Of a stretch of 64,000 bases of DNA, positions 2,690 through 36,674 are shown in pieces; the stretch's first letter is position 1; each line of letters begins with the position of its first letter. The notes beneath the pieces were generated by a model. The model did not search any database, was not told where the DNA came from, and saw nothing but the letters and a program-made list of their open reading frames with translations. The stretch is taken from positions 1 through 64,000 of the IMG/VR virus record IMGVR_UViG_3300009103_000001; one strand, given 5' to 3'. The translations under genes were made by a program, and so were the position numbers.

Positions 2690-2986
2690 ATGAAAATAAT
2701 ATTAAAAATTACGGTTTTTTTGTTATTTACTCTATTTTTTGAAAAATCTTTTTCACAAGAAAAACAAAACACAGAAGGTCCACAAAAAATAATTCTTGAA
2801 ATGGAATTAGAACAAGTTGTAAAATTTAGTGTACCAGCAAACGATGATTTAGAAATTTTAAATAAAGAGAAACAAAAATACCCACCAAAAACAATAGATA
2901 ATGTGTGTTTACCAGAGAATAAGATAAACATACCAAAAACTAATACAATAATAAAGGAGGAAGATTATGATGAAAACGATAAGTAA
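2690..2986 (+). CDS. Small secreted hypothetical protein
   Basis: Signal-peptide-like MKIILKITVFLLFTLFFEKSFSQ; ATG 2690 follows an ATATTTATA motif (track starts at 2645). Confidence 0.65.
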   Translation: MKIILKITVFLLFTLFFEKSFSQEKQNTEGPQKIILEMELEQVVKFSVPANDDLEILNKEKQKYPPKTIDNVCLPENKINIPKTNTIIKEEDYDENDK

Positions 2987-5465
2987 ACTATTAATTTTAC
3001 TACTACTACCAATTTTCACGTTTGGTCAAGTATCAACACTACCACACGCCTCAGATTTTGAGGTTGGTTTTGGTGATTGGACAAATTCTACATTTGATAA
3101 TTTTGATTGGACCCAAACAACTTCAGGGACACCATCATCTGGTACTGGACCACAAATAGGACCACCATACGGAGATTTAGGCTCTTTGGGTTATGTATTT
3201 ACTGAATCATCTGGGTCTAACCAAAATAGCCAAGCATGGTTAGAATGTGAATATAATTTAACTTCATACACCGGAATTGAAATGACTTTTGCATATCATA
3301 TGTATAGTGCAAATGGAGGTGCATATGGACCTGGATTGTTACAGCTGGACATTTATGATGGAACTGCTTGGACATTTGGAGTATGGAGTAGTACAAATAA
3401 TGACCCAGGATGGCAAACTGGATATGTAGATTTATCGGCTTATGATGGATTAGGTCAGGTTATTTTATCTTGGACTGGTGCAACAACTGGTTGGCAATCG
3501 GATATTTCATTAGATAATATAATTGTTACAGGAGTAGAAAATATACCTTTAATAACAACGTATCCCTATGAAGTAGATTTTGAAACAGAATTACAACATA
3601 TAACCGATGCTGCAGCAACAGGGTTTACCTTTGTTAAGCCAGGTTGGAGAAATACTGGTGGTGATGGAACTGATTGGAGAGCAGATGCTGGTGGGACACC
3701 ATCGGTAGATACTGGTCCTGGTAGTGGTGCAACTACAGGTGCTTCAGATTATTCGCCAGGAAATTCTACTGGGTTTTATCTTTATTTTGAATCATCAACA
3801 CCAAACTATCCAACAGTAAATGCTTACTTATTAACACCAAGATTTGATTTAACATCAAACACATACCCAGTAATGGAGTTTTGGTATAATATGTATGGTA
3901 CTGGTATGGGGAGTTTAAAGATGCAAATGAGTACTGATGGGGGAACTACATGGTCAGCAGATTATATGAACATATCTGGTGATAGAGGTAGTGAATGGAC
4001 ACAAGTTATATTTGACATGATTGATTTTAGGGGTGAAACTAATGTAGTATTTAGGTTTGAGGCGGAATCTGCTGCTGATTGGAATAGCGATATTTGTATA
4101 GATAACTTCCGAGTACTAGATATGAATACTAGTCCTTTAGATGTGTATATTGATTTGAATTTAGTTAGTGATGCTTTCGGTGCAAATCCTGGGACATCAA
4201 TAAATATGGTAGGGAATACAACACAATCAATACGTTCCAATGGATATGAATTTTCTATTTTAAATATCAACAACACTAATGGGATAACAATAACAGATGA
4301 TTTAGTCACAAAAAAATTAGCGTTAGTTGATGGTATTATAACCACTGGGGCAAATAAAGTTTCTGTTACAAGTAATTTATGGAATGCTGTAGCTGGTGGT
4401 TCTGACGCTTCTTTTATAAATGGAAATCTTAGGAGATATATTACAACTAATACAAGTACCTATGGTTTCCCACTTGGTTATGGTACAGGTACAGCAAACT
4501 ATCATAAAATAGATTTGATTAATAACAATATGACAGGTGTGTCATATATTGATGCATATGTTTCAGATATGACTGGTGGTAATAATTTAGAACTTAATAC
4601 ATCAGAATCTTCATCGATGATTACTGAAATGGCAGATAAAGAGTGGTTCTTGACTCCCGATGCACAACCAATTACTGGTGATTATGGTGTTAATTTATAT
4701 TTAAATGGGTTAGCAGGGGCTTTATTACAAGATGATAATTTTACCGTACTTAAAAGACCAAATGGTTCTATCACATATGGAGATTGGGATGCGTTTGATG
4801 CAACAACAGATATTCCACCTGCCGGAAGTAACGGTAGAACAACTGCTAGTGGATATGGTCAAAAAACTGGATTTGATAGTTTCAGTGGTTTTGGTATTGG
4901 CGGTACTGGGGGTAGCCCATTACCAATAGTATTATTATCATTTGGGGCTGAATTAAGTGGTAATAATGTGGATGTTAATTGGTCGGTTGCTTCACAAGTT
5001 AACAATGATTATTATACGGTATTAAGAAGTATTGATGCGTATGATTGGGAAGAGATTGGAAGAGTAGAAGGAGCTGGAAATAGTAATACTCAAATGGATT
5101 ATAGATTTATAGATGATGACCCATATATTGGACTATCTTATTATAAATTAAAACAAACTGATTTTGATGGGAAATTCGAAGAATTTTATCCTGTGTCGGT
5201 TTCATATGATGTTGAAATAGTGGGGTTATTAGTTTCTCCAAACCCCGTTACAGATATTATAACCTTAACAATGGATGGTAATTTACACAATGATTTACAT
5301 GTAATTAAAATATTTGATTATAAAGGTAATGTCATACTTACAAATAATCTAATTGGTAATTTAAAAGATTATATGGTAGATGTTAGAAAATTATCATCTG
5401 GCATGTATATAGTTAAAGTTAAAAACAGAAGACAATTAGGTATTGGTAAATTCATAAAAGAATAG
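2967..5465 (+). CDS. Secreted tandem MAM-domain protein with T9SS type A C-terminal sorting domain
   Basis: Signal peptide; two MAM-like repeats (DFE..F..W...DW...GTPS..TGP, F.YHMYG); PLPIVLLSF...PNPVTD...LSSGMYIVKV tail. Confidence 0.85.
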   Translation: MMKTISKLLILLLLPIFTFGQVSTLPHASDFEVGFGDWTNSTFDNFDWTQTTSGTPSSGTGPQIGPPYGDLGSLGYVFTESSGSNQNSQAWLECEYNLTSYTGIEMTFAYHMYSANGGAYGPGLLQLDIYDGTAWTFGVWSSTNNDPGWQTGYVDLSAYDGLGQVILSWTGATTGWQSDISLDNIIVTGVENIPLITTYPYEVDFETELQHITDAAATGFTFVKPGWRNTGGDGTDWRADAGGTPSVDTGPGSGATTGASDYSPGNSTGFYLYFESSTPNYPTVNAYLLTPRFDLTSNTYPVMEFWYNMYGTGMGSLKMQMSTDGGTTWSADYMNISGDRGSEWTQVIFDMIDFRGETNVVFRFEAESAADWNSDICIDNFRVLDMNTSPLDVYIDLNLVSDAFGANPGTSINMVGNTTQSIRSNGYEFSILNINNTNGITITDDLVTKKLALVDGIITTGANKVSVTSNLWNAVAGGSDASFINGNLRRYITTNTSTYGFPLGYGTGTANYHKIDLINNNMTGVSYIDAYVSDMTGGNNLELNTSESSSMITEMADKEWFLTPDAQPITGDYGVNLYLNGLAGALLQDDNFTVLKRPNGSITYGDWDAFDATTDIPPAGSNGRTTASGYGQKTGFDSFSGFGIGGTGGSPLPIVLLSFGAELSGNNVDVNWSVASQVNNDYYTVLRSIDAYDWEEIGRVEGAGNSNTQMDYRFIDDDPYIGLSYYKLKQTDFDGKFEEFYPVSVSYDVEIVGLLVSPNPVTDIITLTMDGNLHNDLHVIKIFDYKGNVILTNNLIGNLKDYMVDVRKLSSGMYIVKVKNRRQLGIGKFIKE

Positions 5466-9735: not shown

Positions 9736-10071
9736 ATGAAAGATAGAATTAGAAAAATATTGAGAGAGTCAGATTTTGATTGGACTAAAGAAAATACCAA
9801 CGAAGTGCCAATAAAAGATATTGAGGATTGGGTTGACAAAACTAGGTATGAAGTTGCTGGATGGATTCAAAAAATAGATGAATTTTATAAAAATGCTCCC
9901 CAAGTTGATTGGAGTATTAGGGGTGATATGGAAGAGGAAGATAAAATGTTAGCATTAACGGTTAAAGGTATTGGTGACGAATTAAGAAATATATATAGTA
10001 GTTTTGATTCCATAGATGATGAAATAGATTATCTCAGAAACCCAAAAATGTTTGACGATAATGAACTTTAA
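9736..10071 (+). CDS. Leader-family protein
   Basis: MKDRIRKILRESDFDWTKE. Confidence 0.75.
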   Translation: MKDRIRKILRESDFDWTKENTNEVPIKDIEDWVDKTRYEVAGWIQKIDEFYKNAPQVDWSIRGDMEEEDKMLALTVKGIGDELRNIYSSFDSIDDEIDYLRNPKMFDDNEL

Positions 10072-10082
10072 AAATAAAAAAA

Positions 10083-10577
10083 ATGAAAAGAATTAAATTA
10101 ACAGAACAACAATTTAAAAATATTTTAAACGAAGAAGATAAAAAAAATTATATGTTTTTTCAAAATCTAAATCAAATAAAAGGTCAAGTCGAAGAATTGT
10201 TATCAATGGATGGGTCTAAATTAGATAATATTTTATCGGATGGTCATGATTGGGCTTCGGACCATATTACAACAGCTAAAGATGATGTTGAAGAAGTTTA
10301 TCATTTTTTTAAACATGGTGAAACAATTAGAGAAAATAAGAGTGAACAAAAAGTAATACCGGAAGATTATAATAAAAAAGTATGGGAGTTTAGAATATCT
10401 TATAATAACGCGAAAGACAATCTAGAAGAAATTTTTAATGATATAATGGACACTGATGAGGTAACAGACCCTAATAAAGCTAAAGATATAATAATAGACC
10501 TTCTCCAACAAGTATATGATGAATATGTAGAAGATAACGATGAAGACAATAATTATACCCATAGCTTTGAATGGTAA
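10083..10577 (+). CDS. Leader-family variant protein
   Basis: MKRIKLTE...ILNEE; internal IRE. Confidence 0.7.
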   Translation: MKRIKLTEQQFKNILNEEDKKNYMFFQNLNQIKGQVEELLSMDGSKLDNILSDGHDWASDHITTAKDDVEEVYHFFKHGETIRENKSEQKVIPEDYNKKVWEFRISYNNAKDNLEEIFNDIMDTDEVTDPNKAKDIIIDLLQQVYDEYVEDNDEDNNYTHSFEW

Positions 10578-29661: not shown

Positions 29662-30501
29662 ATGAAAAATTTAAAATATTATTTTGAGGATGAAAGAATA
29701 AAATATTTATTCTTTTTAATTATTTTTACTCTATTTGTTTGTTGTACAGTATATTCACAAGAATACTATGATGATATATATTATACTGTTGATGATTATG
29801 AGACTTTAGATACATTAGATACGGATACTTTAGAAAAATCAATATATATAACTAATAATTACTATACCAATTATTCTTCAAGAATTAATAGATTTTATAG
29901 AAGACCATATTATGCATCTTATTGGTCATATTATAACCCACATTGGTATTCCTATTATTATTACGGTTATAGTAATGTTTCATTTTATTGGTGGTACAAT
30001 AGGAATTGGGGTGTTGGTTGGTATTACCCTTATAATAACTATTCTTATTGGTATTGGCCAAATTATTATTCAAACTATTATTGTTATAGTAATTATTACC
30101 CAAATAATTATTATTACGGTCATAGAAAAAGTATATCCACTAATAATAGAAAAACAACTACTTCAAATAAAAATGTTAAATTAATAAAAGTAGAAAAAGA
30201 AAAAGATTATAGCTATAAAAATGATAATTATATTAAGGTAAATAATACAAACCAAGTTAAGGTAAATAACCAAGTAAGAGTTTCAAAAAGTGATATTAAT
30301 ATTGAAAAATTAAATAAATCAAATAATAATTATAAAAATAGTAGTGTAAGAGTTAATAGTAATTATAATAATAACAAAGTGAAAATTAATAACAATTATA
30401 ATAACAACTATAAAAATAATTATAATAAACCTAGACGTATAAACATGAACCCTAATAGGTCAAATCAAGTTAATCGTTCTAATAATAGATTACCTAAATA
30501 A
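29662..30501 (+). CDS. Exported protein with Tyr/Trp-rich core and Asn-rich tail
   Basis: TM/signal, YYDDIYY, low-complexity Y/W and N tracts. Confidence 0.65.
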   Translation: MKNLKYYFEDERIKYLFFLIIFTLFVCCTVYSQEYYDDIYYTVDDYETLDTLDTDTLEKSIYITNNYYTNYSSRINRFYRRPYYASYWSYYNPHWYSYYYYGYSNVSFYWWYNRNWGVGWYYPYNNYSYWYWPNYYSNYYCYSNYYPNNYYYGHRKSISTNNRKTTTSNKNVKLIKVEKEKDYSYKNDNYIKVNNTNQVKVNNQVRVSKSDINIEKLNKSNNNYKNSSVRVNSNYNNNKVKINNNYNNNYKNNYNKPRRINMNPNRSNQVNRSNNRLPK

Positions 30502-30568: not shown

Positions 30569-31411
30569 TTGTCTAAAAAAAAAATGATAAAAACTAAAGA
30601 GTACAATTCCCTAGTTCAGAAACTAAGGGAATTTTTTTTGCAAAAGGGGTTTCTAGAAGTACCCGTTCAATCTAGATTATCAATATTAGCAGCATGTGAA
30701 GACCCATATACGGTTAAGAAGTTTAAGTGGAAAGGTAATGATTGGCCTTTACCACAAACAGGCCAAATGTGGTTAGAACATGAATTACTATCCAATCCTA
30801 GTGAAAATGGTTTTTTCTGTATATCAACATCATACAGACACGAACCAAATCCCATTCCTGGTAGACATGAAACTATATTCCCAATGTTTGAATTTGAAGC
30901 AAAAGGTGATATGGGTGAGTTAATTAAAATGGAATTTGAACTATTAGAACACTTAGGGTTAGATACACCTAAAAGATTGTATTATGATAATATTTGTAAA
31001 GAATATAACATAGACATTTTAGAAACTGAACATGAAACTAAGATGTGGGAAGATTTTGGTTCATCTGTTTCATTAGAGTATTTTCCAGAAAGAACTTCAC
31101 CTTTTTGGAACATGAAACATGGTGGTGATGGAATATTCAATAAAGTAGATGTGATATTATTTGGTCAAGAAACAATTGGTTCAGCCGAAAGAGCAACTAA
31201 TAAAGATGAAATGAGGTATTATTTCAATACTATATCAGATGGTGGTTATAAAAATAAATTATATGATTTATTTGGAGAAAAAAGGGTAAATGAAGAATTA
31301 GAAAAATATTTATCTTTTGATTTTTTTCCTAGATTTGGTGGCGGTATTGGTGTAACTAGACTTTTAAGGGCAATGAAGTTACAAGAAAAAAATATGTTAG
31401 TGACAGTATAG
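30569..31411 (+). CDS. Class IIb aaRS (AsnRS/AspRS-like) catalytic domain only
   Basis: FF..KGFLEV, LPQTGQ, SYRHE...RHE..F.M.E.E, ETIGSAER, GGGIGVTRL; no N-terminal OB domain. Confidence 0.85.
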   Translation: MSKKKMIKTKEYNSLVQKLREFFLQKGFLEVPVQSRLSILAACEDPYTVKKFKWKGNDWPLPQTGQMWLEHELLSNPSENGFFCISTSYRHEPNPIPGRHETIFPMFEFEAKGDMGELIKMEFELLEHLGLDTPKRLYYDNICKEYNIDILETEHETKMWEDFGSSVSLEYFPERTSPFWNMKHGGDGIFNKVDVILFGQETIGSAERATNKDEMRYYFNTISDGGYKNKLYDLFGEKRVNEELEKYLSFDFFPRFGGGIGVTRLLRAMKLQEKNMLVTV

Positions 31412-31603
31412 GTATTGAATGTTAGAATTATTATTCTTATTTTTAATATATGAATAAGAATAATAAAACATGTCCAGATTGCGGGGTAGAAATGTCTTTA
31501 ATACATTCACCTTATATTGGTAATTGTACCAAAAAATACAGTAAAATTAAAAGTTTATTGTTAGAAGTTACAGAAGTACAAAATAATTGATATTTATTTT
31601 TAG

Positions 31604-32935
31604 ATGTTATTTAAAAGAATATTAAATACTATAATTTTATTATTATTTTGTATAAGTATTAAAGCACAGTTACCTAATGATGATTGTAATAATGCAACAC
31701 CATTAGGTAATCTACCAAATCCCGCAAATTGTGGTAACGGACCAAACAACAACGGTCAAGGTGCACCAGTTACATTTAATAATCTTACAAATGTAAATTC
31801 CCAAACAGAAACTCCTTATACTACTTTAATTAATTGCCAAGGTACTATAGGAAATAATATGGCATCACCGGCTACAGATGTTTGGTATTCATTTGTCGCA
31901 ACAGGTAATTCCTTAGATTTAACTATTACTGGAGGAATTAACCAACCAAATGTTGGAATATGGACAGGTAATTGCGGTGCATTAATTGGTGTTGGATGTG
32001 ACATTGGTGCAGGTGGTAATTTAAATACTACCGCACAATTAACCCCAGGTCAAACTTATTATATTCAAGTTAGTGGTGGGAATCCTGCCGACCAAGGTGT
32101 ATTCGATTTAACTTTACAAAACAATAATAGTTGTGACGATTGTTTATTATCGTCCACAATGACTGTTACACCATTACCAACAAATGGTGTATACCAAGCA
32201 GGGACTACTGTAACTTTTTGTTTTACTGTTACAGAATGGTCTCAAGAAAATCAAAACTGGTTTCATGGTGTTGTACCAATTATGGGTGCCGGTTGGGGAC
32301 CAATCACACCGGTTAGTGCCGCGAATACTTGTGATGGTGGTCCTGGTGTCTGGGATTGGTTTACAAATATTGGTACACCAAATGGAAATTCCGATGGATT
32401 CTTTTTTGATGGTGATTTATTCAATAATCCAAATGGAAATCCAGATGATAACTATGGGGATAATTGTAATGGTAATGTCAATTGGGAATTTTGTTGGGAA
32501 GCAACAACTATTGATTGTCCTCCAGGTCAAGATGGGGATGATTTAAGTGTTTTTGTAGAAACATATGCAGATGGAGAAACTGGGAGTTGGGTTAATATTG
32601 CTTGTCAAAATGACCCAGTTTTTGCTTTCTCAGCAAGTTTAACATGTTGTCCACCACCATTAGAATCTCATACAGATGAAATATGTTTGGGACAAAATAA
32701 TGGTACGATAACTGTCACTGGTCAGGGAAGTAGTCCTTGGGATTATGTTTGGGAAGACCCATCTTCAAACGTGATTCAGACATCTAATAATGTTAATGGG
32801 TCGGATACCATGACAGGTTTATCTCCTGGTATATATACTGTTACTGTCACTGATGATGATGGTTGTGTACAAACGATAACAATAACTATATTGGCCGGAG
32901 GCCAAGCCATGACAAGTAGTATATGGCATAACTAA
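31604..32935 (+). CDS. Secreted adhesin-like protein with SprB-like repeat
   Basis: Signal peptide; NDDC..A; PPC-like domain; C.G..NGTI...Y.W...GL.PG.YTVTVTD..GC; ends IWHN. Confidence 0.75.
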   Translation: MLFKRILNTIILLLFCISIKAQLPNDDCNNATPLGNLPNPANCGNGPNNNGQGAPVTFNNLTNVNSQTETPYTTLINCQGTIGNNMASPATDVWYSFVATGNSLDLTITGGINQPNVGIWTGNCGALIGVGCDIGAGGNLNTTAQLTPGQTYYIQVSGGNPADQGVFDLTLQNNNSCDDCLLSSTMTVTPLPTNGVYQAGTTVTFCFTVTEWSQENQNWFHGVVPIMGAGWGPITPVSAANTCDGGPGVWDWFTNIGTPNGNSDGFFFDGDLFNNPNGNPDDNYGDNCNGNVNWEFCWEATTIDCPPGQDGDDLSVFVETYADGETGSWVNIACQNDPVFAFSASLTCCPPPLESHTDEICLGQNNGTITVTGQGSSPWDYVWEDPSSNVIQTSNNVNGSDTMTGLSPGIYTVTVTDDDGCVQTITITILAGGQAMTSSIWHN

Positions 32936-32952
32936 TAATTAATAATAAAAAA

Positions 32953-33516
32953 ATGAAAAAACTATTAATTTTATTTGGAATTTTAACATTCTTTACGACA
33001 GATTTGTTTTCACAAATCACAACTAACCCCGATACTGCTTGTGTTGGTTCGGTAGGTGAACAATATTGGGTCACAAACACTGCTGGTTCAACTTATGATT
33101 GGACAGTAACAGGTGGTGGTGGTTCAATTGCGTCAGGTCAAGGAACATCAGCAATTACAGTTGATTGGGGTAATACACCAGGACTTTACCCATCGGCTAT
33201 TACGGTAGTTGAAACTAATGCTGCTGGATGTACAGATACAGTAGATTTGGATGTATTCTTATTATTACCAACATTTACACAAATAGGTCCTTTCTGTGAA
33301 GGTGACCCATGTGAAATATTAGATGGTACACCAGCTGGTGGTGTATGGACTGGCACAGGAGTAGTATTTGACCCAGTAACAGGGAATTATGAATTCTGTC
33401 CAACAACATCTGGTAATGGTACATTCAATTTAACATACACAGTTGGTGGATGTTCTATAGTAATGACGGTAGTTGTTAACGCAGCACCAGTATTAGGACC
33501 AATAATACATAATTAA
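32953..33516 (+). CDS. Secreted PKD/Ig-like protein
   Basis: Signal peptide; Y.WTV.GG.I..GQGT..ITVDW; ends IIHN. Confidence 0.75.
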   Translation: MKKLLILFGILTFFTTDLFSQITTNPDTACVGSVGEQYWVTNTAGSTYDWTVTGGGGSIASGQGTSAITVDWGNTPGLYPSAITVVETNAAGCTDTVDLDVFLLLPTFTQIGPFCEGDPCEILDGTPAGGVWTGTGVVFDPVTGNYEFCPTTSGNGTFNLTYTVGGCSIVMTVVVNAAPVLGPIIHN

Positions 33517-34097
33517 TGTTTAGGATAATATTAATAATATTATCTTTATTACCATTATTTGGTTTGTCACAGGATGTGCAAACAATAGAATCGTGTGAAA
33601 GCTCATTATTAATCCAAGAATATTGGGTTGATGATGGGCCTAACACTTACTATTGGAGTGTAGAAAACGGTGTAATACTCAATGGTCAAGGTGAAAATTT
33701 AGTTACTATAGATTGGAACAATACTCCTTTTGGTCAATATCTTTTAAGTGTATATGTTATTAGTGATGCAGGGTGTGCTGGTGATACTTCATATCTTATA
33801 ATAGATATAGATGAATGTTCATTTGACGGTATTTACATACCCAACGCATTTAGCCCAAATGGTGATGGAGTAAATGATGTTTTTGGGCCTGTAGGACAAA
33901 ATATTGAAAGGTTAGAATTATTTATTTTTAATCGTTGGGGACAACAAATATATGAATCATATCATGGAGAAGCATGGGATGGTACATTATACGATAAAAT
34001 GTGTCAAATAGATGTATATGTTTGGAAGGTAAACTACAAATTTGAAGGAGAAAATTTTATGCACTATGCATATGGTCATGTAAGTTTAATTAGATAA
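33516..34097 (+). CDS. Protein with T9SS type B (gliding-motility-associated) C-terminal domain
   Basis: YIPNAFSPNGDGVNDVF...IFNRWGQ.IY...WDG...G.V.LIR. Confidence 0.92.
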   Translation: MFRIILIILSLLPLFGLSQDVQTIESCESSLLIQEYWVDDGPNTYYWSVENGVILNGQGENLVTIDWNNTPFGQYLLSVYVISDAGCAGDTSYLIIDIDECSFDGIYIPNAFSPNGDGVNDVFGPVGQNIERLELFIFNRWGQQIYESYHGEAWDGTLYDKMCQIDVYVWKVNYKFEGENFMHYAYGHVSLIR

Positions 34098-34107
34098 ATG
34101 TTTTAAA

Positions 34108-34701
34108 ATGAGAACACTTCTTTTAATATTTCTAATATTAAAGGTAAACATTTTATTCTCACAAATAATATGGATAGAGGATTTTACACCTTATATTAAT
34201 GGAACACAAAATGCGTTAAAGTGGACAACTAATGCAAATAATTGTGATGCTGATGGTTTACCAGGAACTGTTGCTGATAACTATTGGGGAACATTTAACG
34301 GAGAATTTAGGTGTGAGGATATTGAAGGATTAACTTGTTGTTCTGGTGGACAAGGAGAAGCAGATAACTTATGGCTATCAGAAGATATTAACATAAATGG
34401 TTTCACAAATATATACGTTTCAATAACAACTAGGGTACAAGGAAATGTAGAATGTGCTGCTTGTGGTTTAGGTGGTGATTATTTAGAGGCATCATACCAA
34501 ATAGATGGAGGACCATGGATTCCGTTTACTACTATATGTGGAGCTACTAATGGATTTACTAATACTGATTGTATATATGTGGGTTTAGGTAACATAGTTA
34601 AAATTCGTGTTATATTAGGGAATCAAGCAAACGATGAGGTTTATTATTTTGATGATGTAACAGTTTATAGTACACAAAATAATGTAATTTTTCATAATTA
34701 A
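34108..34701 (+). CDS. Secreted beta-sandwich protein
   Basis: Signal peptide, Cys-rich; ends IFHN. Confidence 0.7.
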   Translation: MRTLLLIFLILKVNILFSQIIWIEDFTPYINGTQNALKWTTNANNCDADGLPGTVADNYWGTFNGEFRCEDIEGLTCCSGGQGEADNLWLSEDININGFTNIYVSITTRVQGNVECAACGLGGDYLEASYQIDGGPWIPFTTICGATNGFTNTDCIYVGLGNIVKIRVILGNQANDEVYYFDDVTVYSTQNNVIFHN

Positions 34702-35338: not shown

Positions 35339-35601
35339 AAAAATTAATAACAATAATATTAATATCATTTAATTATATAACATATGGACAAGATAGGAAA
35401 GACAAACCAATTTCAGTTGTTTCAGAAAATAGAGATACATTATTTTTAACAAATGATGATGTGGGTTATATGATACAAAATGTTTGGGATGAAAACTATG
35501 AAAATGAAAAACCAATAATAATCATAAAGTCAGAAAATTGGATTATAACAGAATATATTAAAAGAAATGAAATAGTTTTCATAAATGAATCAAAACAATG
35601 A
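35335..35601 (+). CDS. Small secreted hypothetical protein
   Basis: Signal-peptide-like start. Confidence 0.55.
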   Translation: MKKLITIILISFNYITYGQDRKDKPISVVSENRDTLFLTNDDVGYMIQNVWDENYENEKPIIIIKSENWIITEYIKRNEIVFINESKQ

Positions 35602-36674
35602 AAAACAACATAGAACACGATTATTTAAAACTACTCAAGGATGTCCTTGAAAATGGGCAAGAAAAAAAAGATAGAACAGGAACAGGTACTATCTCTGTAT
35701 TTGGTAGACAAATCAGACACGATATGTCAAGAGGGTTCCCTCTATTAACAACAAAGAAAATGTATTGGAAAGGAATTGTAACAGAATTGTTATGGTTCTT
35801 ACGTGGTGATACAAACATCAAATACCTTGTTGATAATGATTGTCATATTTGGGATGGTGATGCGTATAAAAATTATGAAAAAAACGCTGTTGTAGGTGAT
35901 GTTATTGATAGTTACTACGAACCATCAACTGATAAATGGCATCTCTATAATAAAGAAGAACTCATAGACAAAATCAAAACAGATGAGGTTACTGAGTTTG
36001 CAAAGAAGTGGGGTGATTTAGGTCCTATCTATGGTAAACAATGGAGAGATTGGGGTGGTGATAAGTTTGTAGGTGATAACTTTCCTAACTTTAAGAATGG
36101 TATCGACCAAATCCAACGAGCAATAGACAAACTAAAAACAGACCCAGATTCTAGAAGAAATATTGTTTCAGCTTGGAATGTAGATGAGTTAGACCAAATG
36201 ACGCTTCCACCTTGTCATTATGGGTTTCAAGTTTACACAAGAGAGTTGAATTATAATGAAAAGGTACATGAAGCTAGAAAAAGGTTCGGGTTTGAATCAG
36301 AGGATGGTACTAGAACGTTTGATATTAATAGTAAAGAATCTATTGAATTTCTAAATTCATCACAAAGAGCAATCTCTCTAATGTGGAATCAACGTTCAGT
36401 CGATACATTCTTAGGTTTACCATTCAATATAGCATCTTATGGTTTACTACTTGAAATCATAGCTAAAGAAGTTAATATGGTTCCTGATGAATTGATTGGT
36501 ACTTTGGGTGATGTTCATTTATATAAGAATCATATCGAACAAGCGAAGGAACAATTAACTAGAGAACCTATGGAATTACCTAAATTAAATATAGTAAATA
36601 AAACATCCAACAATGAAATATTGATTGAAAATTATCAATCACACCCAACAATTAAAGCAGAATTATCTAATTAA
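35598..36674 (+). CDS. thyA: Thymidylate synthase
   Basis: DRTGTGT, FPLLTTK, LGPIYGKQWR, LPPCH, QRSVD.FLG.PFNIASY, GDVHLY.NH. Confidence 0.98.
   Translation: MKNNIEHDYLKLLKDVLENGQEKKDRTGTGTISVFGRQIRHDMSRGFPLLTTKKMYWKGIVTELLWFLRGDTNIKYLVDNDCHIWDGDAYKNYEKNAVVGDVIDSYYEPSTDKWHLYNKEELIDKIKTDEVTEFAKKWGDLGPIYGKQWRDWGGDKFVGDNFPNFKNGIDQIQRAIDKLKTDPDSRRNIVSAWNVDELDQMTLPPCHYGFQVYTRELNYNEKVHEARKRFGFESEDGTRTFDINSKESIEFLNSSQRAISLMWNQRSVDTFLGLPFNIASYGLLLEIIAKEVNMVPDELIGTLGDVHLYKNHIEQAKEQLTREPMELPKLNIVNKTSNNEILIENYQSHPTIKAELSN

What the first reader, a model, noticed from the sequence alone, without database searches (positions are those of the whole stretch)
31589..34701. Split adhesin operon: three secreted proteins end in I-x-H-N, one carries the T9SS type B CTD
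31604 ends SSIWHN, 32953 ends GPIIHN and 34108 ends NVIFHN. All three have signal peptides, otherwise unrelated bodies and no recognisable T9SS CTD. The fourth gene (33516) is little more than a PKD-like domain plus the type B CTD (seen). The shared extreme C-terminal motif suggests an undescribed sorting or strand-donation signal that assembles a SprB-like fibre in trans on the CTD-bearing subunit (inference). Gliding/T9SS mutants of Flavobacterium johnsoniae are phage resistant (established), so receptor masking is a plausible purpose.
Basis: partly seen in the sequence, partly recalled or inferred. Interest (0 to 1): 0.72.

Follow-up and report, generated by a model that had tools for sequence, protein, structure and literature searches.

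The report
Split adhesin joined by docking tail
A giant phage of Bacteroidota carries a miniature "adhesin in pieces": three secreted binding modules that lack a type IX secretion signal all end in a conserved five-residue tail. That tail is predicted to plug into the first domain of the one neighbouring protein that has the signal, and the same design occurs in bacterial operons.

Summary
Genes A (31604-32935), B (32953-33516) and D (34108-34701) end in IWHN, IIHN and IFHN. They are the only 3 of 533 ORFs in the 210-kb virus record that end in HN (0.05 expected). All 113 full-length B homologues end [GST]-P-I-x-H-[N/Y/F/D]. Codons and stop codons vary, so the constraint is on the protein.

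Gene C (33516-34097) is a signal peptide, a PKD_6-like domain and a type B CTD. A complex predictor docks B's tail (residues 176-187) onto C's N-terminal domain, not its CTD: ipSAE 0.73, best control 0.00.

Unrelated protein bodies carry the tail in related jumbo phages. Bacterial genomes hold the full-size version: 2-3 CTD-less proteins of up to about 2,100 aa ending I-x-H-D, then a PKD_6-headed protein. Where that protein is complete (2 genomes) it ends in a type B CTD and is followed by PorP/SprF.

Best reading: a split SprB-like adhesin. The tail lines up with the conserved first-strand motif of PKD_6, which the acceptor proteins lack, so CTD-less heads join head-to-tail to the CTD carrier and ride the T9SS. 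Binding and export are inferred, not shown. I found no paper describing this. The phage's purpose is open.

The parts
31604..32935 (+). Gene A, 443 aa. Signal peptide (Gln at +1), then the N-terminal 'head' module that is common to giant SprB-like adhesins, one SprB-type repeat, and a C-terminal tail. No CTD.
   Evidence: ORF; no Pfam or NCBIfam hit; 764 cluster representatives at E<=1e-30, mostly 1,000-6,000-aa adhesins; a 1,670-aa homologue in uncultured phage LR756502 carries its own type B CTD.
32921..32932 (+). Tail of A: I-W-H-N, followed by TAA.
   Evidence: The close homologues P0206 and L003 also end GIWHN.
32953..33516 (+). Gene B, 187 aa. Signal peptide, N-terminal PKD_6 domain (acceptor type), an Ig-like second domain, and the tail. 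Its stop codon overlaps the start of C (TAATG).
   Evidence: (PKD_6 at residues 23-101, HMM positions 8-82).
33019..33255 (+). PKD_6 domain of B. It is homologous to the N-terminal domain of C, so it is a possible second acceptor for the tails of A or D.
   Evidence: (hhalign probability 99%, E 4e-18). Acceptance of a tail by B was not tested.
33499..33513 (+). Tail of B: P-I-I-H-N.
   Evidence: P183, I184 and H186 are invariant or nearly so in 71 aligned homologues. All 113 homologues carry the tail. In the complex model, residues 176-187 form the interface.
33516..34097 (+). Gene C, 193 aa. The carrier or acceptor subunit: signal peptide, PKD_6-like domain, type B T9SS CTD.
33570..33818 (+). 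N-terminal PKD_6-like acceptor domain of C (residues 19-101), the predicted docking site for the tail.
   Evidence: interface residues are 20, 22, 34-39, 41-43, 77, 79-83 and 85-94; beta-sandwich strands at 21-26, 33-37, 43-49, 53-56, 62-66, 73-83 and 88-100; homology to B's PKD_6 domain.
33834..34094 (+). Type B T9SS C-terminal sorting domain of C (residues 107-193).
   Evidence: CHU_C 49.8 bits, cut-off 27. (TIGR04131 49.4 bits, cut-off 35)..
34108..34701 (+). Gene D, 197 aa. Signal peptide, a jelly-roll binding module (CBM4/MAM/Eph-LBD-like fold) and the tail. No CTD.
   Evidence: AF2 pLDDT 77. Foldseek top hits are CBM4, Eph ligand-binding domain and MAM, at TM about 0.45-0.5.
34687..34698 (+). 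Tail of D: I-F-H-N, followed by TAA.
   Evidence: All 11 short D homologues end I[FY]HN. The tail is unstructured in the monomer model.

Best explanation
The four genes encode a split, SprB-like surface adhesin.

C is the carrier. Its type B CTD gives access to the host's type IX secretion system and to a PorP/SprF-type shuttle. Its mature N-terminus is a PKD_6-like domain.

A, B and D are CTD-less binding or spacer modules that Sec exports to the periplasm. Each ends in the tail [P/G]-I-x-H-[N/D/Y/F]-COOH.

The tail corresponds to the conserved G-x-[IV]-x-G first-strand (A-strand) motif of an internal PKD_6 repeat. The acceptor proteins lack that motif. The tail therefore docks in trans on the acceptor domain, by donor-strand-like complementation.

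The joint links the C-terminus of one protein to the N-terminal domain of the next. This recreates the linear order of a single-chain adhesin (head, repeats, PKD, CTD). CTD-less heads can then be threaded out with, and displayed on, the CTD-bearing subunit.

B has both an acceptor-type domain and a tail, so it may act as an adaptor (A or D onto B onto C). Alternatively, several heads may compete for one carrier.

Shown: the motif, its conservation, its synteny and the domain identities. Predicted: B tail binding to the C N-domain. Inferred: strand complementation, co-export through the T9SS and surface display. Open: why the phage needs it. The candidates are altered adhesion of infected cells, or occupation or masking of gliding/T9SS surface structures that flavobacterial phages depend on.
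For: Motif statistics and conservation.

Protein-level constraint: among the 44 tail ORFs collected (one of them a false positive, L078), Ile is encoded by ATT/ATA/ATC with Val GTT in three, His by CAT/CAC, and all three stop codons are used.

Portability: unrelated bodies carry the tail in related jumbo-phage contigs. The last residue is usually the same within a genome (HN with HN, HD with HD, HY with HY); L023 (HF and HY) and L028 (HD and HN) are mixed.

B is followed directly by C in every phage locus that extends past B.

Complex prediction for B with C: ipSAE 0.73/0.73/0.77, best of 3 controls 0.00. That mark was reached by 58 of 80 solved complexes and 2 of 110 mismatched pairs; the counts hold only roughly because my own alignments were used. 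The interface is B residues 176-187 plus 113 and 115-116, against C residues 20-94.

Acceptor homology between B and C.

A-strand argument: internal PKD_6 repeats match from HMM position 2-3 and read P-A-x-P-G-x-[IV]-[ST]-G-x3-V-C. B matches only from HMM position 8 and the bacterial acceptor from position 12. Mature acceptors start with polar residues 5-11 positions before the first Cys.

Bacterial counterparts in genomes G629 and G724: small protein, then a 1,400-aa CUB protein (..LIYHD), 321 aa (..PIYHD), 858 aa with Ig_7 x4 (..TIFHD), an 887-aa protein with PKD_6-like head, Ig_7 and TIGR04131 type B CTD, then PorP/SprF at 180-186 bits. G425, G529 and the metagenome contigs L027, L028, L064 and L065 show the same design but are cut short.

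Homologues of the A body usually carry their own type B CTD (64 of 150). The tail therefore replaces a CTD.
Against: No experiment exists, and binding rests on one structure predictor run with my own alignments.

No residue pairs or coordinates were returned, so the strand geometry is inferred.

AF2 on C alone already predicts an N-terminal strand at 21-26 (pLDDT about 73). In the phage copy the A-strand position is therefore not simply empty.

There are more tails than acceptors: 3 to 2 in the window and 3 to 1 in bacteria. A simple 1:1 chain cannot be the whole story.

The tails of A and D lack the Pro and were not tested in a complex.

Export of a non-covalent complex through the T9SS has not been described (none found).

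No PorP/SprF gene was found in the phage record, which is only 64% complete.

The system is rare in bacteria: the operon marker hit 5 of 401 genomes. The PIxH[ND]-TAA pattern looked no more frequent than its control by eye, with no formal count, and the 20 hits I inspected were not adhesin tails.
Confidence: 0.6

Rival explanations
1. The tail is a sorting or recognition signal read by something other than the neighbouring acceptor domain. Candidates are a PorP/SprF shuttle, a T9SS component, the small conserved operon protein (123-190 aa) acting as a chaperone, or a periplasmic PDZ-type protein that reads C-termini. Co-location with C would then reflect a shared pathway, not direct docking.
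For: I and H are conserved, and P is common, in the tail across phages and bacteria whose acceptor domains have diverged strongly. Bacterial operons always include a small conserved protein and PorP/SprF. Tails outnumber acceptors. The HY and HF endings look loosely like C-terminal aromatic signals.
Against: The complex model puts the tail on C with controls at 0.00. The phage clusters keep B and C but have no small protein and no PorP/SprF. The tail aligns with an intrinsic strand motif of the acceptor's own domain family.
Confidence: 0.2
2. The tail docks on C, but the complex is not exported. The CTD-less proteins act in the periplasm or at the translocon, for example by loading or jamming the T9SS or a shuttle during infection. 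The tiny CTD-only protein elsewhere in the genome might act with them.
For: The phage also encodes a 139-aa protein that is a signal peptide, about 35 aa and a type B CTD. No PorP/SprF gene was found in the phage. Phage resistance in Flavobacterium maps to gliding and T9SS genes (PMC9804748; bioRxiv 10.1101/2020.10.02.323337).
Against: The bodies are adhesin heads and carbohydrate-binding-like modules, typical of surface proteins. The bacterial operons look like ordinary adhesin operons with a cognate shuttle.
Confidence: 0.08
3. The tail is a neutral scar of gene fission: leftover linker residues where a long adhesin gene was cut. It has no function.
For: Single-chain homologues exist. The tail sits exactly where a PKD_6 domain would start.
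Against: P, I and H are invariant or nearly so in 113 homologues at 45-93% identity while the codons vary. The same tail sits on unrelated bodies. It is kept from 30%-GC phages to 47%-GC bacteria.
Confidence: 0.03
4. The signal is at nucleotide level, or is a recoding or intein-like device. Options are a recombination or coupling site at CATAAYTAA, ribosomal bypass or trans-splicing onto the CTD, or an intein-type His-Asn.
For: Inteins end in His-Asn. B's stop codon overlaps C's start codon. I-x-H-N loosely resembles the I-x-P-N at the start of the CTD.
Against: Synonymous codons and all three stop codons are used. The last residue is also D, Y or F. Every downstream gene has its own start codon and signal peptide. 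D lies downstream of C. There is no Hint or intein domain. The register of conserved positions differs from the start of the CTD.
Confidence: 0.02

Closest known systems
SprB/SprF-type operons: a T9SS type B CTD adhesin with its cognate PorP/SprF shuttle (Flavobacterium johnsoniae; PMC12618676, PMC9143113)
   Same: C and the bacterial acceptor proteins carry a bona fide type B CTD. In the bacteria the next gene is a PorP/SprF family protein. The bodies are SprB-like adhesin modules (SprB repeats, Ig_7, PKD, CUB).
   Different: Here most of the adhesin mass is encoded in separate genes that have no CTD and instead end in a 5-residue tail. No such tail or trans-assembly is described in the papers I read. 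The phage version has no shuttle gene in the part of the genome that is held.
Donor-strand complementation or exchange in pili: chaperone-usher pili, and Bacteroidota type V pili (FimA/Mfa1).
   Same: A short terminal segment of one subunit is proposed to complete or extend a beta-sandwich domain of the next subunit. This gives a non-covalent head-to-tail fibre.
   Different: The subunits here are not pilins. There is no lipoprotein precursor, no proteolytic priming and no usher. Export is proposed through the T9SS by means of one CTD-bearing subunit. The donor is a conserved C-terminal I-x-H-[NDYF] pentapeptide. Strand geometry was not resolved.
Hitchhiker (piggyback) export of signal-less partners, as in Tat substrates (own knowledge)
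   Same: Proteins that lack the export signal are proposed to leave bound to a partner that has it.
   Different: A different machine is involved (the T9SS outer-membrane translocon). I found no description of piggyback T9SS export.
Engineered split-domain tags (SpyTag/SpyCatcher from CnaB2) and cadherin EC1 strand swapping (own knowledge; cadherin EC1-2 are the top Foldseek hits for C)
   Same: A terminal beta-strand peptide is separated from the rest of an Ig-like adhesin domain and re-associates with it.
   Different: There is no evidence for a covalent isopeptide bond. No invariant Lys occurs in the acceptor, and the last residue can be Tyr or Phe. The cadherin match is a generic tandem Ig-like fold.

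Membership tests
T9SS type B CTD substrates (TIGR04131 / Pfam CHU_C) | A C-terminal domain of about 85 aa that matches TIGR04131 or PF13585 above the curated cut-off | tested here: met
   This applies to gene C only: TIGR04131 49.4 bits (cut-off 35) and CHU_C 49.8 bits (cut-off 27), at residues 107-193. The bacterial acceptors score 37.9 and 35.5 bits, and CHU_C 56 bits.
T9SS type B CTD substrates (TIGR04131 / Pfam CHU_C) | The same domain in genes A, B and D | tested here: not met
   There is no CTD hit of type A or type B at E<=0.1. The proteins end 4-8 residues after their last folded domain.
T9SS type B CTD substrates | A cognate PorP/SprF shuttle, usually encoded next to the substrate; secretion depends on it (PMC12618676) | tested here: inconclusive
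   PF11751 was not found in the 210-kb record, which is 64% complete. It is present directly downstream in the bacterial operons (TIGR03519 180 and 186 bits). Dependence on the shuttle cannot be tested in silico.
Pfam PKD_6 (PF19408) | A match above the gathering score | tested here: met
   B scores 40.7 bits (cut-off 25), but only over HMM positions 8-82. C's N-domain is not above the Pfam threshold, yet is homologous by profile-profile comparison (probability 99%). The G629 acceptor is sub-threshold at 23.7 bits, HMM positions 12-73.
SprB-like giant adhesins | SprB repeats (PF13573) together with the N-terminal head module | tested here: inconclusive
   A has no Pfam SprB hit. However, its residues 345-440 align to the repeated units of giant adhesins, in up to 64 stretches, and its residues 5-430 align to their N-terminal heads. 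The L064 acceptor has Pfam SprB repeats.
Donor-strand-complemented pili (type V / chaperone-usher) | A pilin fold with a missing strand, supplied by the neighbouring subunit's terminal extension; lipoprotein or usher-dependent assembly | tested here: not met
   There are no pilin families in Pfam. The proteins have SPase I-type signal peptides with Gln at +1, not lipoprotein signals. Only the docking principle resembles these pili, so this is not membership.
Inteins / Hint domains (C-terminal His-Asn) | A Hint fold, with HN followed by a Cys, Ser or Thr extein residue | tested here: not met
   There is no Hint domain. HN is followed by a stop codon. The last residue varies between N, D, Y and F.

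The most novel reading that the evidence does not exclude
A previously unrecognised rule of the type IX secretion world. A five-residue C-terminal tail (I-x-H-[N/D/Y/F]) would be a portable 'docking tag' that lets any CTD-less periplasmic protein plug into the PKD_6-type head of a type B CTD carrier. The protein is then co-exported and displayed. Bacteroidota and their giant phages would thereby build modular, exchangeable-head adhesins from separate genes, and phages would use the host's gliding and secretion machinery to re-dress the surface of the infected cell.
Probability: 0.4. Interest if true: 0.85.

Novelty: new variant of a known kind. Interest (0 to 1): 0.78.

Why it matters
T9SS substrates are currently defined by a C-terminal domain of about 80-100 residues. 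Proteins without one are assumed not to use the system.

If the tail works as proposed, three things follow:
- The predicted T9SS secretome would widen.
- It would explain how very large gliding adhesins can be encoded in pieces and equipped with alternative heads.
- It would yield a natural 5-residue tag and a roughly 80-residue catcher pair for surface display in Bacteroidota.

It would also show that jumbo phages carry complete, miniaturised host-type adhesin systems. That bears on how phages alter the surface, adhesion or superinfection status of infected flavobacteria, whose phage sensitivity is tied to gliding and T9SS genes (PMC9804748).

The hypothesis can be tested directly with two small proteins, B and C, each under 200 aa.

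Tried and rejected
1. Tail as a truncated start of the type B CTD (I-Y-I-P-N-A-F). The conserved positions are out of register: the tail is P-I-x-H-N with a variable -2 position, while the CTD is [IV]-[YF]-[IV]-P-N with a conserved -2 position. The last residue can also be D, Y or F. Rejected.

2. Ribosomal bypass, readthrough or trans-splicing onto the CTD, and a DNA-level site. Rejected because of codon and stop-codon variation, separate start codons and signal peptides, and D lying downstream of C.

3. Intein-like His-Asn. No Hint domain. Rejected.

4. Covalent isopeptide joint of the SpyTag kind. The acceptor has no invariant Lys and Y/F endings occur. Not supported.

5. Long D homologues (323-345 aa) carry a C-terminal extension of about 140 aa that looked like a type A CTD by eye. 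No Pfam or NCBIfam model confirms this, so I make no claim.

6. Pattern scan for P-I-x-H-[ND]-TAA in 401 Bacteroidota genomes. By eye, hits were no more frequent than the reversed control and did not cluster; I made no formal count. Of 20 hits inspected, 16 were not at the end of an ORF of at least 40 aa and none of the other 4 was an adhesin tail; one was a FecR-like protein. The pattern misses G-I-x-H-D tails and TAG/TGA stops.

7. 34 PKD_6 loci from 401 genomes held no tails, but these loci extend only 1.5 kb on each side.

8. The genome-contig scan with B found only distant PKD_6 hits.

9. The promoter and terminator scan of the cluster found nothing above shuffled sequence.

10. Co-variation between the tail's last residue and acceptor residues 81-86 is visible but is confounded by phylogeny, so I did not use it.
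Full report
**What is there.**

The window is the first 64 kb of a 210,157-bp, 30%-GC virus record. IMG/VR classes it as linear and about 64% complete. Its relatives are jumbo-phage contigs of 165-483 kb.

At 31.6-34.7 kb, four same-strand genes lie almost end to end:
- A: 31604-32935, 443 aa.
- B: 32953-33516, 187 aa.
- C: 33516-34097, 193 aa.
- D: 34108-34701, 197 aa.

B's stop codon overlaps C's start codon (TAATG).

All four begin with a signal-peptide-like segment followed by Gln at the likely +1 position. This fits the Bacteroidota habit of an N-terminal Gln after signal peptidase I cleavage, which I state from my own knowledge; the detection is heuristic and no predictor was run.

The cluster is richer in G+C than its surroundings: 36.5% in 32-34 kb against 24-31% around it.

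A, B and D end in SSIWHN, GPIIHN and NVIFHN. In the whole genome, 533 ORFs are at least 50 aa long. Exactly three of them end in HN, and they are these three. From amino-acid composition, 0.049 I-x-H-N ends are expected, giving a Poisson P of about 2e-5 before counting their adjacency.

No CTD of either type is detectable in A, B or D. B has a PKD_6 domain. C has a type B CTD at residues 107-193 (CHU_C 49.8 bits, TIGR04131 49.4 bits).

**The tail is a conserved, portable, protein-level feature.**

- All 113 full-length homologues of B in the 5.8-billion-protein collection (45-93% identity) end [GST]-P-I-x-H-[N/Y/F/D]. The endings are HN 67, HY 22, HF 21 and HD 3.
- In a 71-sequence alignment, P183, I184 and H186 are invariant or nearly so.
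- All eleven 197-201-aa homologues of D end I[FY]HN.
- In related phage contigs the gene next to the B-C pair often has a quite different body but the same kind of tail. Examples are a 382-385-aa PKD-containing protein ending GIISHD, and 186-195-aa proteins ending TIFHY, NINHY or PIIHY.
- Within one genome the tails usually share their last residue.
- The collected loci yielded 44 tail-ending ORFs, one of which (L078) is a false positive. Ile is encoded by ATT, ATA or ATC, with Val GTT in three. His is CAT or CAC. All three stop codons occur.

Selection therefore acts on the peptide, not on the DNA.

**Where the tail goes.**

B is followed directly by C in every phage locus that extends past B. 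I gave my single complex job to mature B and mature C, each with its family alignment.

The predictor supports binding. ipSAE was 0.73, 0.73 and 0.77, against a best control of 0.00. In the tool's calibration that mark was reached by 58 of 80 solved complexes and 2 of 110 mismatched pairs. Those counts hold only roughly here, because my own alignments were used.

The interface is formed by:
- B residues 176-187 (NAAPVLGPIIHN) plus 113 and 115-116.
- C residues 20, 22, 34-39, 41-43, 77, 79-83 and 85-94.

This is C's N-terminal beta-sandwich, not its CTD. AF2 on C alone gives two Ig-like domains (pLDDT 87.5). The N-domain strands lie at 21-26, 33-37, 43-49, 53-56, 62-66, 73-83 and 88-100.

The tail therefore sits against the first, second and last strands and the F-G loop. 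That is where an A/A' strand lies in such folds, which is my inference because no coordinates were returned. In the D monomer model the tail is unstructured.

**Why that site: the split-domain argument.**

C's N-domain is homologous to B's PKD_6 domain (hhalign probability 99%, E 4e-18).

In bacterial adhesins with tandem PKD_6 repeats, each repeat matches the Pfam model from position 2-3. Each reads P-A-x-P-G-x-[IV]-[ST]-G-x-x-x-V-C. Laid on this, the tail G-P-I-x-H-N occupies G6-x-I8-x-G10-x, with its invariant Ile on the conserved [IV].

The acceptor proteins begin later in the model: B at HMM position 8 and a bacterial acceptor at position 12. Their mature N-termini are short and polar and lack the G-x-[IV] motif. 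Examples are QDVQTIESC, QTDTLC and QPSNSSNPQVLC.

The simplest reading is a PKD_6 domain divided between two genes. The upstream protein keeps the first strand as its C-terminal tail. The downstream protein, after its own signal peptide is removed, starts with the rest of the domain.

**The same design in bacteria, at full size.**

The A body is the common N-terminal head of giant SprB-like adhesins (764 cluster representatives at E<=1e-30). Of the top 150 hits, 64 have a type B CTD motif near the end. A 1,670-aa homologue in the 642-kb uncultured phage LR756502 is a single chain of head, SprB repeats, PKD and type B CTD.

Four long hits (1,645-2,110 aa) instead end PIYHD, GIFHD or GIYHD. They lie on contigs with 45-48% G+C, and those long enough to show flanking genes (L028, L065) carry bacterial housekeeping genes.

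Using the small conserved protein of those operons as a marker, I found 5 of 401 sampled genomes of the same class with it. Four of those loci show tail genes followed by an acceptor-type gene. The fifth is cut by the contig end before any tail could be seen.

Two of them are complete, G629 and G724. G629 lengths and scores come first, G724 second:
1. Small protein (123 aa).
2. 1,400/1,507-aa CUB protein ending LIYHD.
3. 321/329-aa protein ending PIYHD, weakly D-like.
4. 858/915-aa protein ending IFHD (four Ig_7 domains in the G629 copy).
5. 887/838-aa protein with signal peptide, PKD_6-like head, Ig_7 and TIGR04131 type B CTD (37.9/35.5 bits; CHU_C 56 bits, PKD_6 and Ig_7 checked in the G629 copy).
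6. PorP/SprF family protein (180/186 bits).

The phage cluster is a miniature of this operon without the shuttle gene. No PorP/SprF gene was found in the incomplete record.

**What the modules are.**

- D models as a jelly roll. Its nearest solved folds are CBM4 carbohydrate-binding modules, Eph receptor ligand-binding domains and MAM domains, at TM about 0.45-0.5.
- A is an adhesin head plus one SprB-type repeat.
- B is a PKD_6 domain plus an Ig-like domain. The corresponding last domain in the bacterial 565-aa homologue is Ig_7, which Pfam describes as 'CHU_C associated'.

These are surface-adhesin parts. In single-chain relatives the place of the tail is taken by further domains and a CTD.

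**Mechanism proposed, and its status.**

Shown:
- The motif, its conservation and its synteny.
- The domain identities.
- The bacterial parallels.

Predicted:
- B tail binding to the C head.

Inferred:
- Strand complementation.
- Head-to-tail linear assembly that mimics a single chain.
- Co-export of CTD-less subunits through the T9SS.
- Anchoring through a host PorP/SprF shuttle. This rests on the published behaviour of type B CTDs (PMC12618676, PMC9143113).

Unresolved:
- Tails outnumber acceptors, 3 to 2 in the window and 3 to 1 in bacteria. Either several heads compete for one carrier, giving exchangeable heads, or there are further sites.
- Whether A or D bind B or C was not tested.

**Purpose in the phage.**

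This is open. The phage invests in the T9SS more widely. It encodes a MAM-domain protein with a type A CTD (2967-5465). It also encodes a 139-aa protein that is little more than a type B CTD (genome 153838-154257).

Phage resistance in Flavobacterium commonly arises by mutation of gliding and T9SS genes (PMC9804748; bioRxiv 10.1101/2020.10.02.323337). Altering or occupying these surface structures is therefore a reasonable idea. Changing the adhesion of infected cells is another. Nothing here tests either.

**Novelty.**

Literature searches on type B CTDs, SprC/D/B/F, phage-encoded T9SS substrates and piggyback export returned no description of this tail or of trans-assembled T9SS adhesins. 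The library is incomplete, so this is 'not found', not 'never described'.

I class the finding as a new variant of known kinds. Those kinds are type B CTD adhesin operons and donor-strand-like subunit docking. The finding comes with a specific hypothesis that is cheap to test.

Noticed in passing
window 2967-5465 (+): An 832-aa secreted protein with MAM domains (91.9 bits) and a type A T9SS CTD (Por_Secre_tail, 43.9 bits). The phage therefore uses both classes of T9SS signal.
   Followed up: partly
L018:1342-1761 (genome G000:C1:153838-154257, outside the window): A 139-aa ORF consisting of a signal peptide, about 35 residues and a type B CTD (CHU_C 67.8 bits). It is a near-bare sorting domain that could compete for the translocon or a shuttle. 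It has no tail-bearing neighbours.
   Followed up: partly
window 30569-31411 (+): A 280-aa class II aminoacyl-tRNA-synthetase-like protein (tRNA-synt_2, 42 bits). Its DNA is 69% identical over 264 nt to the 'tRNA ligase' of Prochlorococcus phage P-SSM7, which is the only nucleotide-level match of this region in the phage collection.
   Followed up: no
window 29662-30501 (+): A 279-aa ORF with a hydrophobic N-terminus and an extreme Tyr/Asn/Trp-rich low-complexity body. It has no family hit.
   Followed up: no
window 32001-34000: The adhesin cluster has 36.5% G+C against 24-31% in the flanking 2-kb bins. This could reflect acquisition from a host or its Gly/Thr/Pro-rich composition.
   Followed up: no
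P0189-P0205 (homologues of D): Long forms (323-345 aa) replace the tail with an extension of about 140 aa that starts LP[IV]ELLSF and ends in a YYxLxGKE-type segment. No Pfam or NCBIfam model matches it. It may be an alternative, unclassified sorting module.
   Followed up: partly
L064:8523-8930, L065:15094-15486, L094 (reverse strand, at 9840-10211 of the reversed locus) and relatives: A small conserved protein (123-190 aa, no family hit) is embedded in the bacterial tail-adhesin operons, but I did not see it in the phage clusters. It may be a chaperone or assembly factor. It served as the marker that found 5 of 401 genomes.
   Followed up: partly
L006:5404-5988 and L006:6001-6555: A variant phage locus. 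The upstream protein ends ..SPIFH, with no residue after His. The B homologue ends ..SPIYKQ, with no His. These are natural exceptions that could show which tail positions matter.
   Followed up: no
window 35598-36674 (+): A thymidylate synthase of 358 aa that matches the 266-position Pfam model end to end, so it carries about 90 residues of insertion.
   Followed up: no
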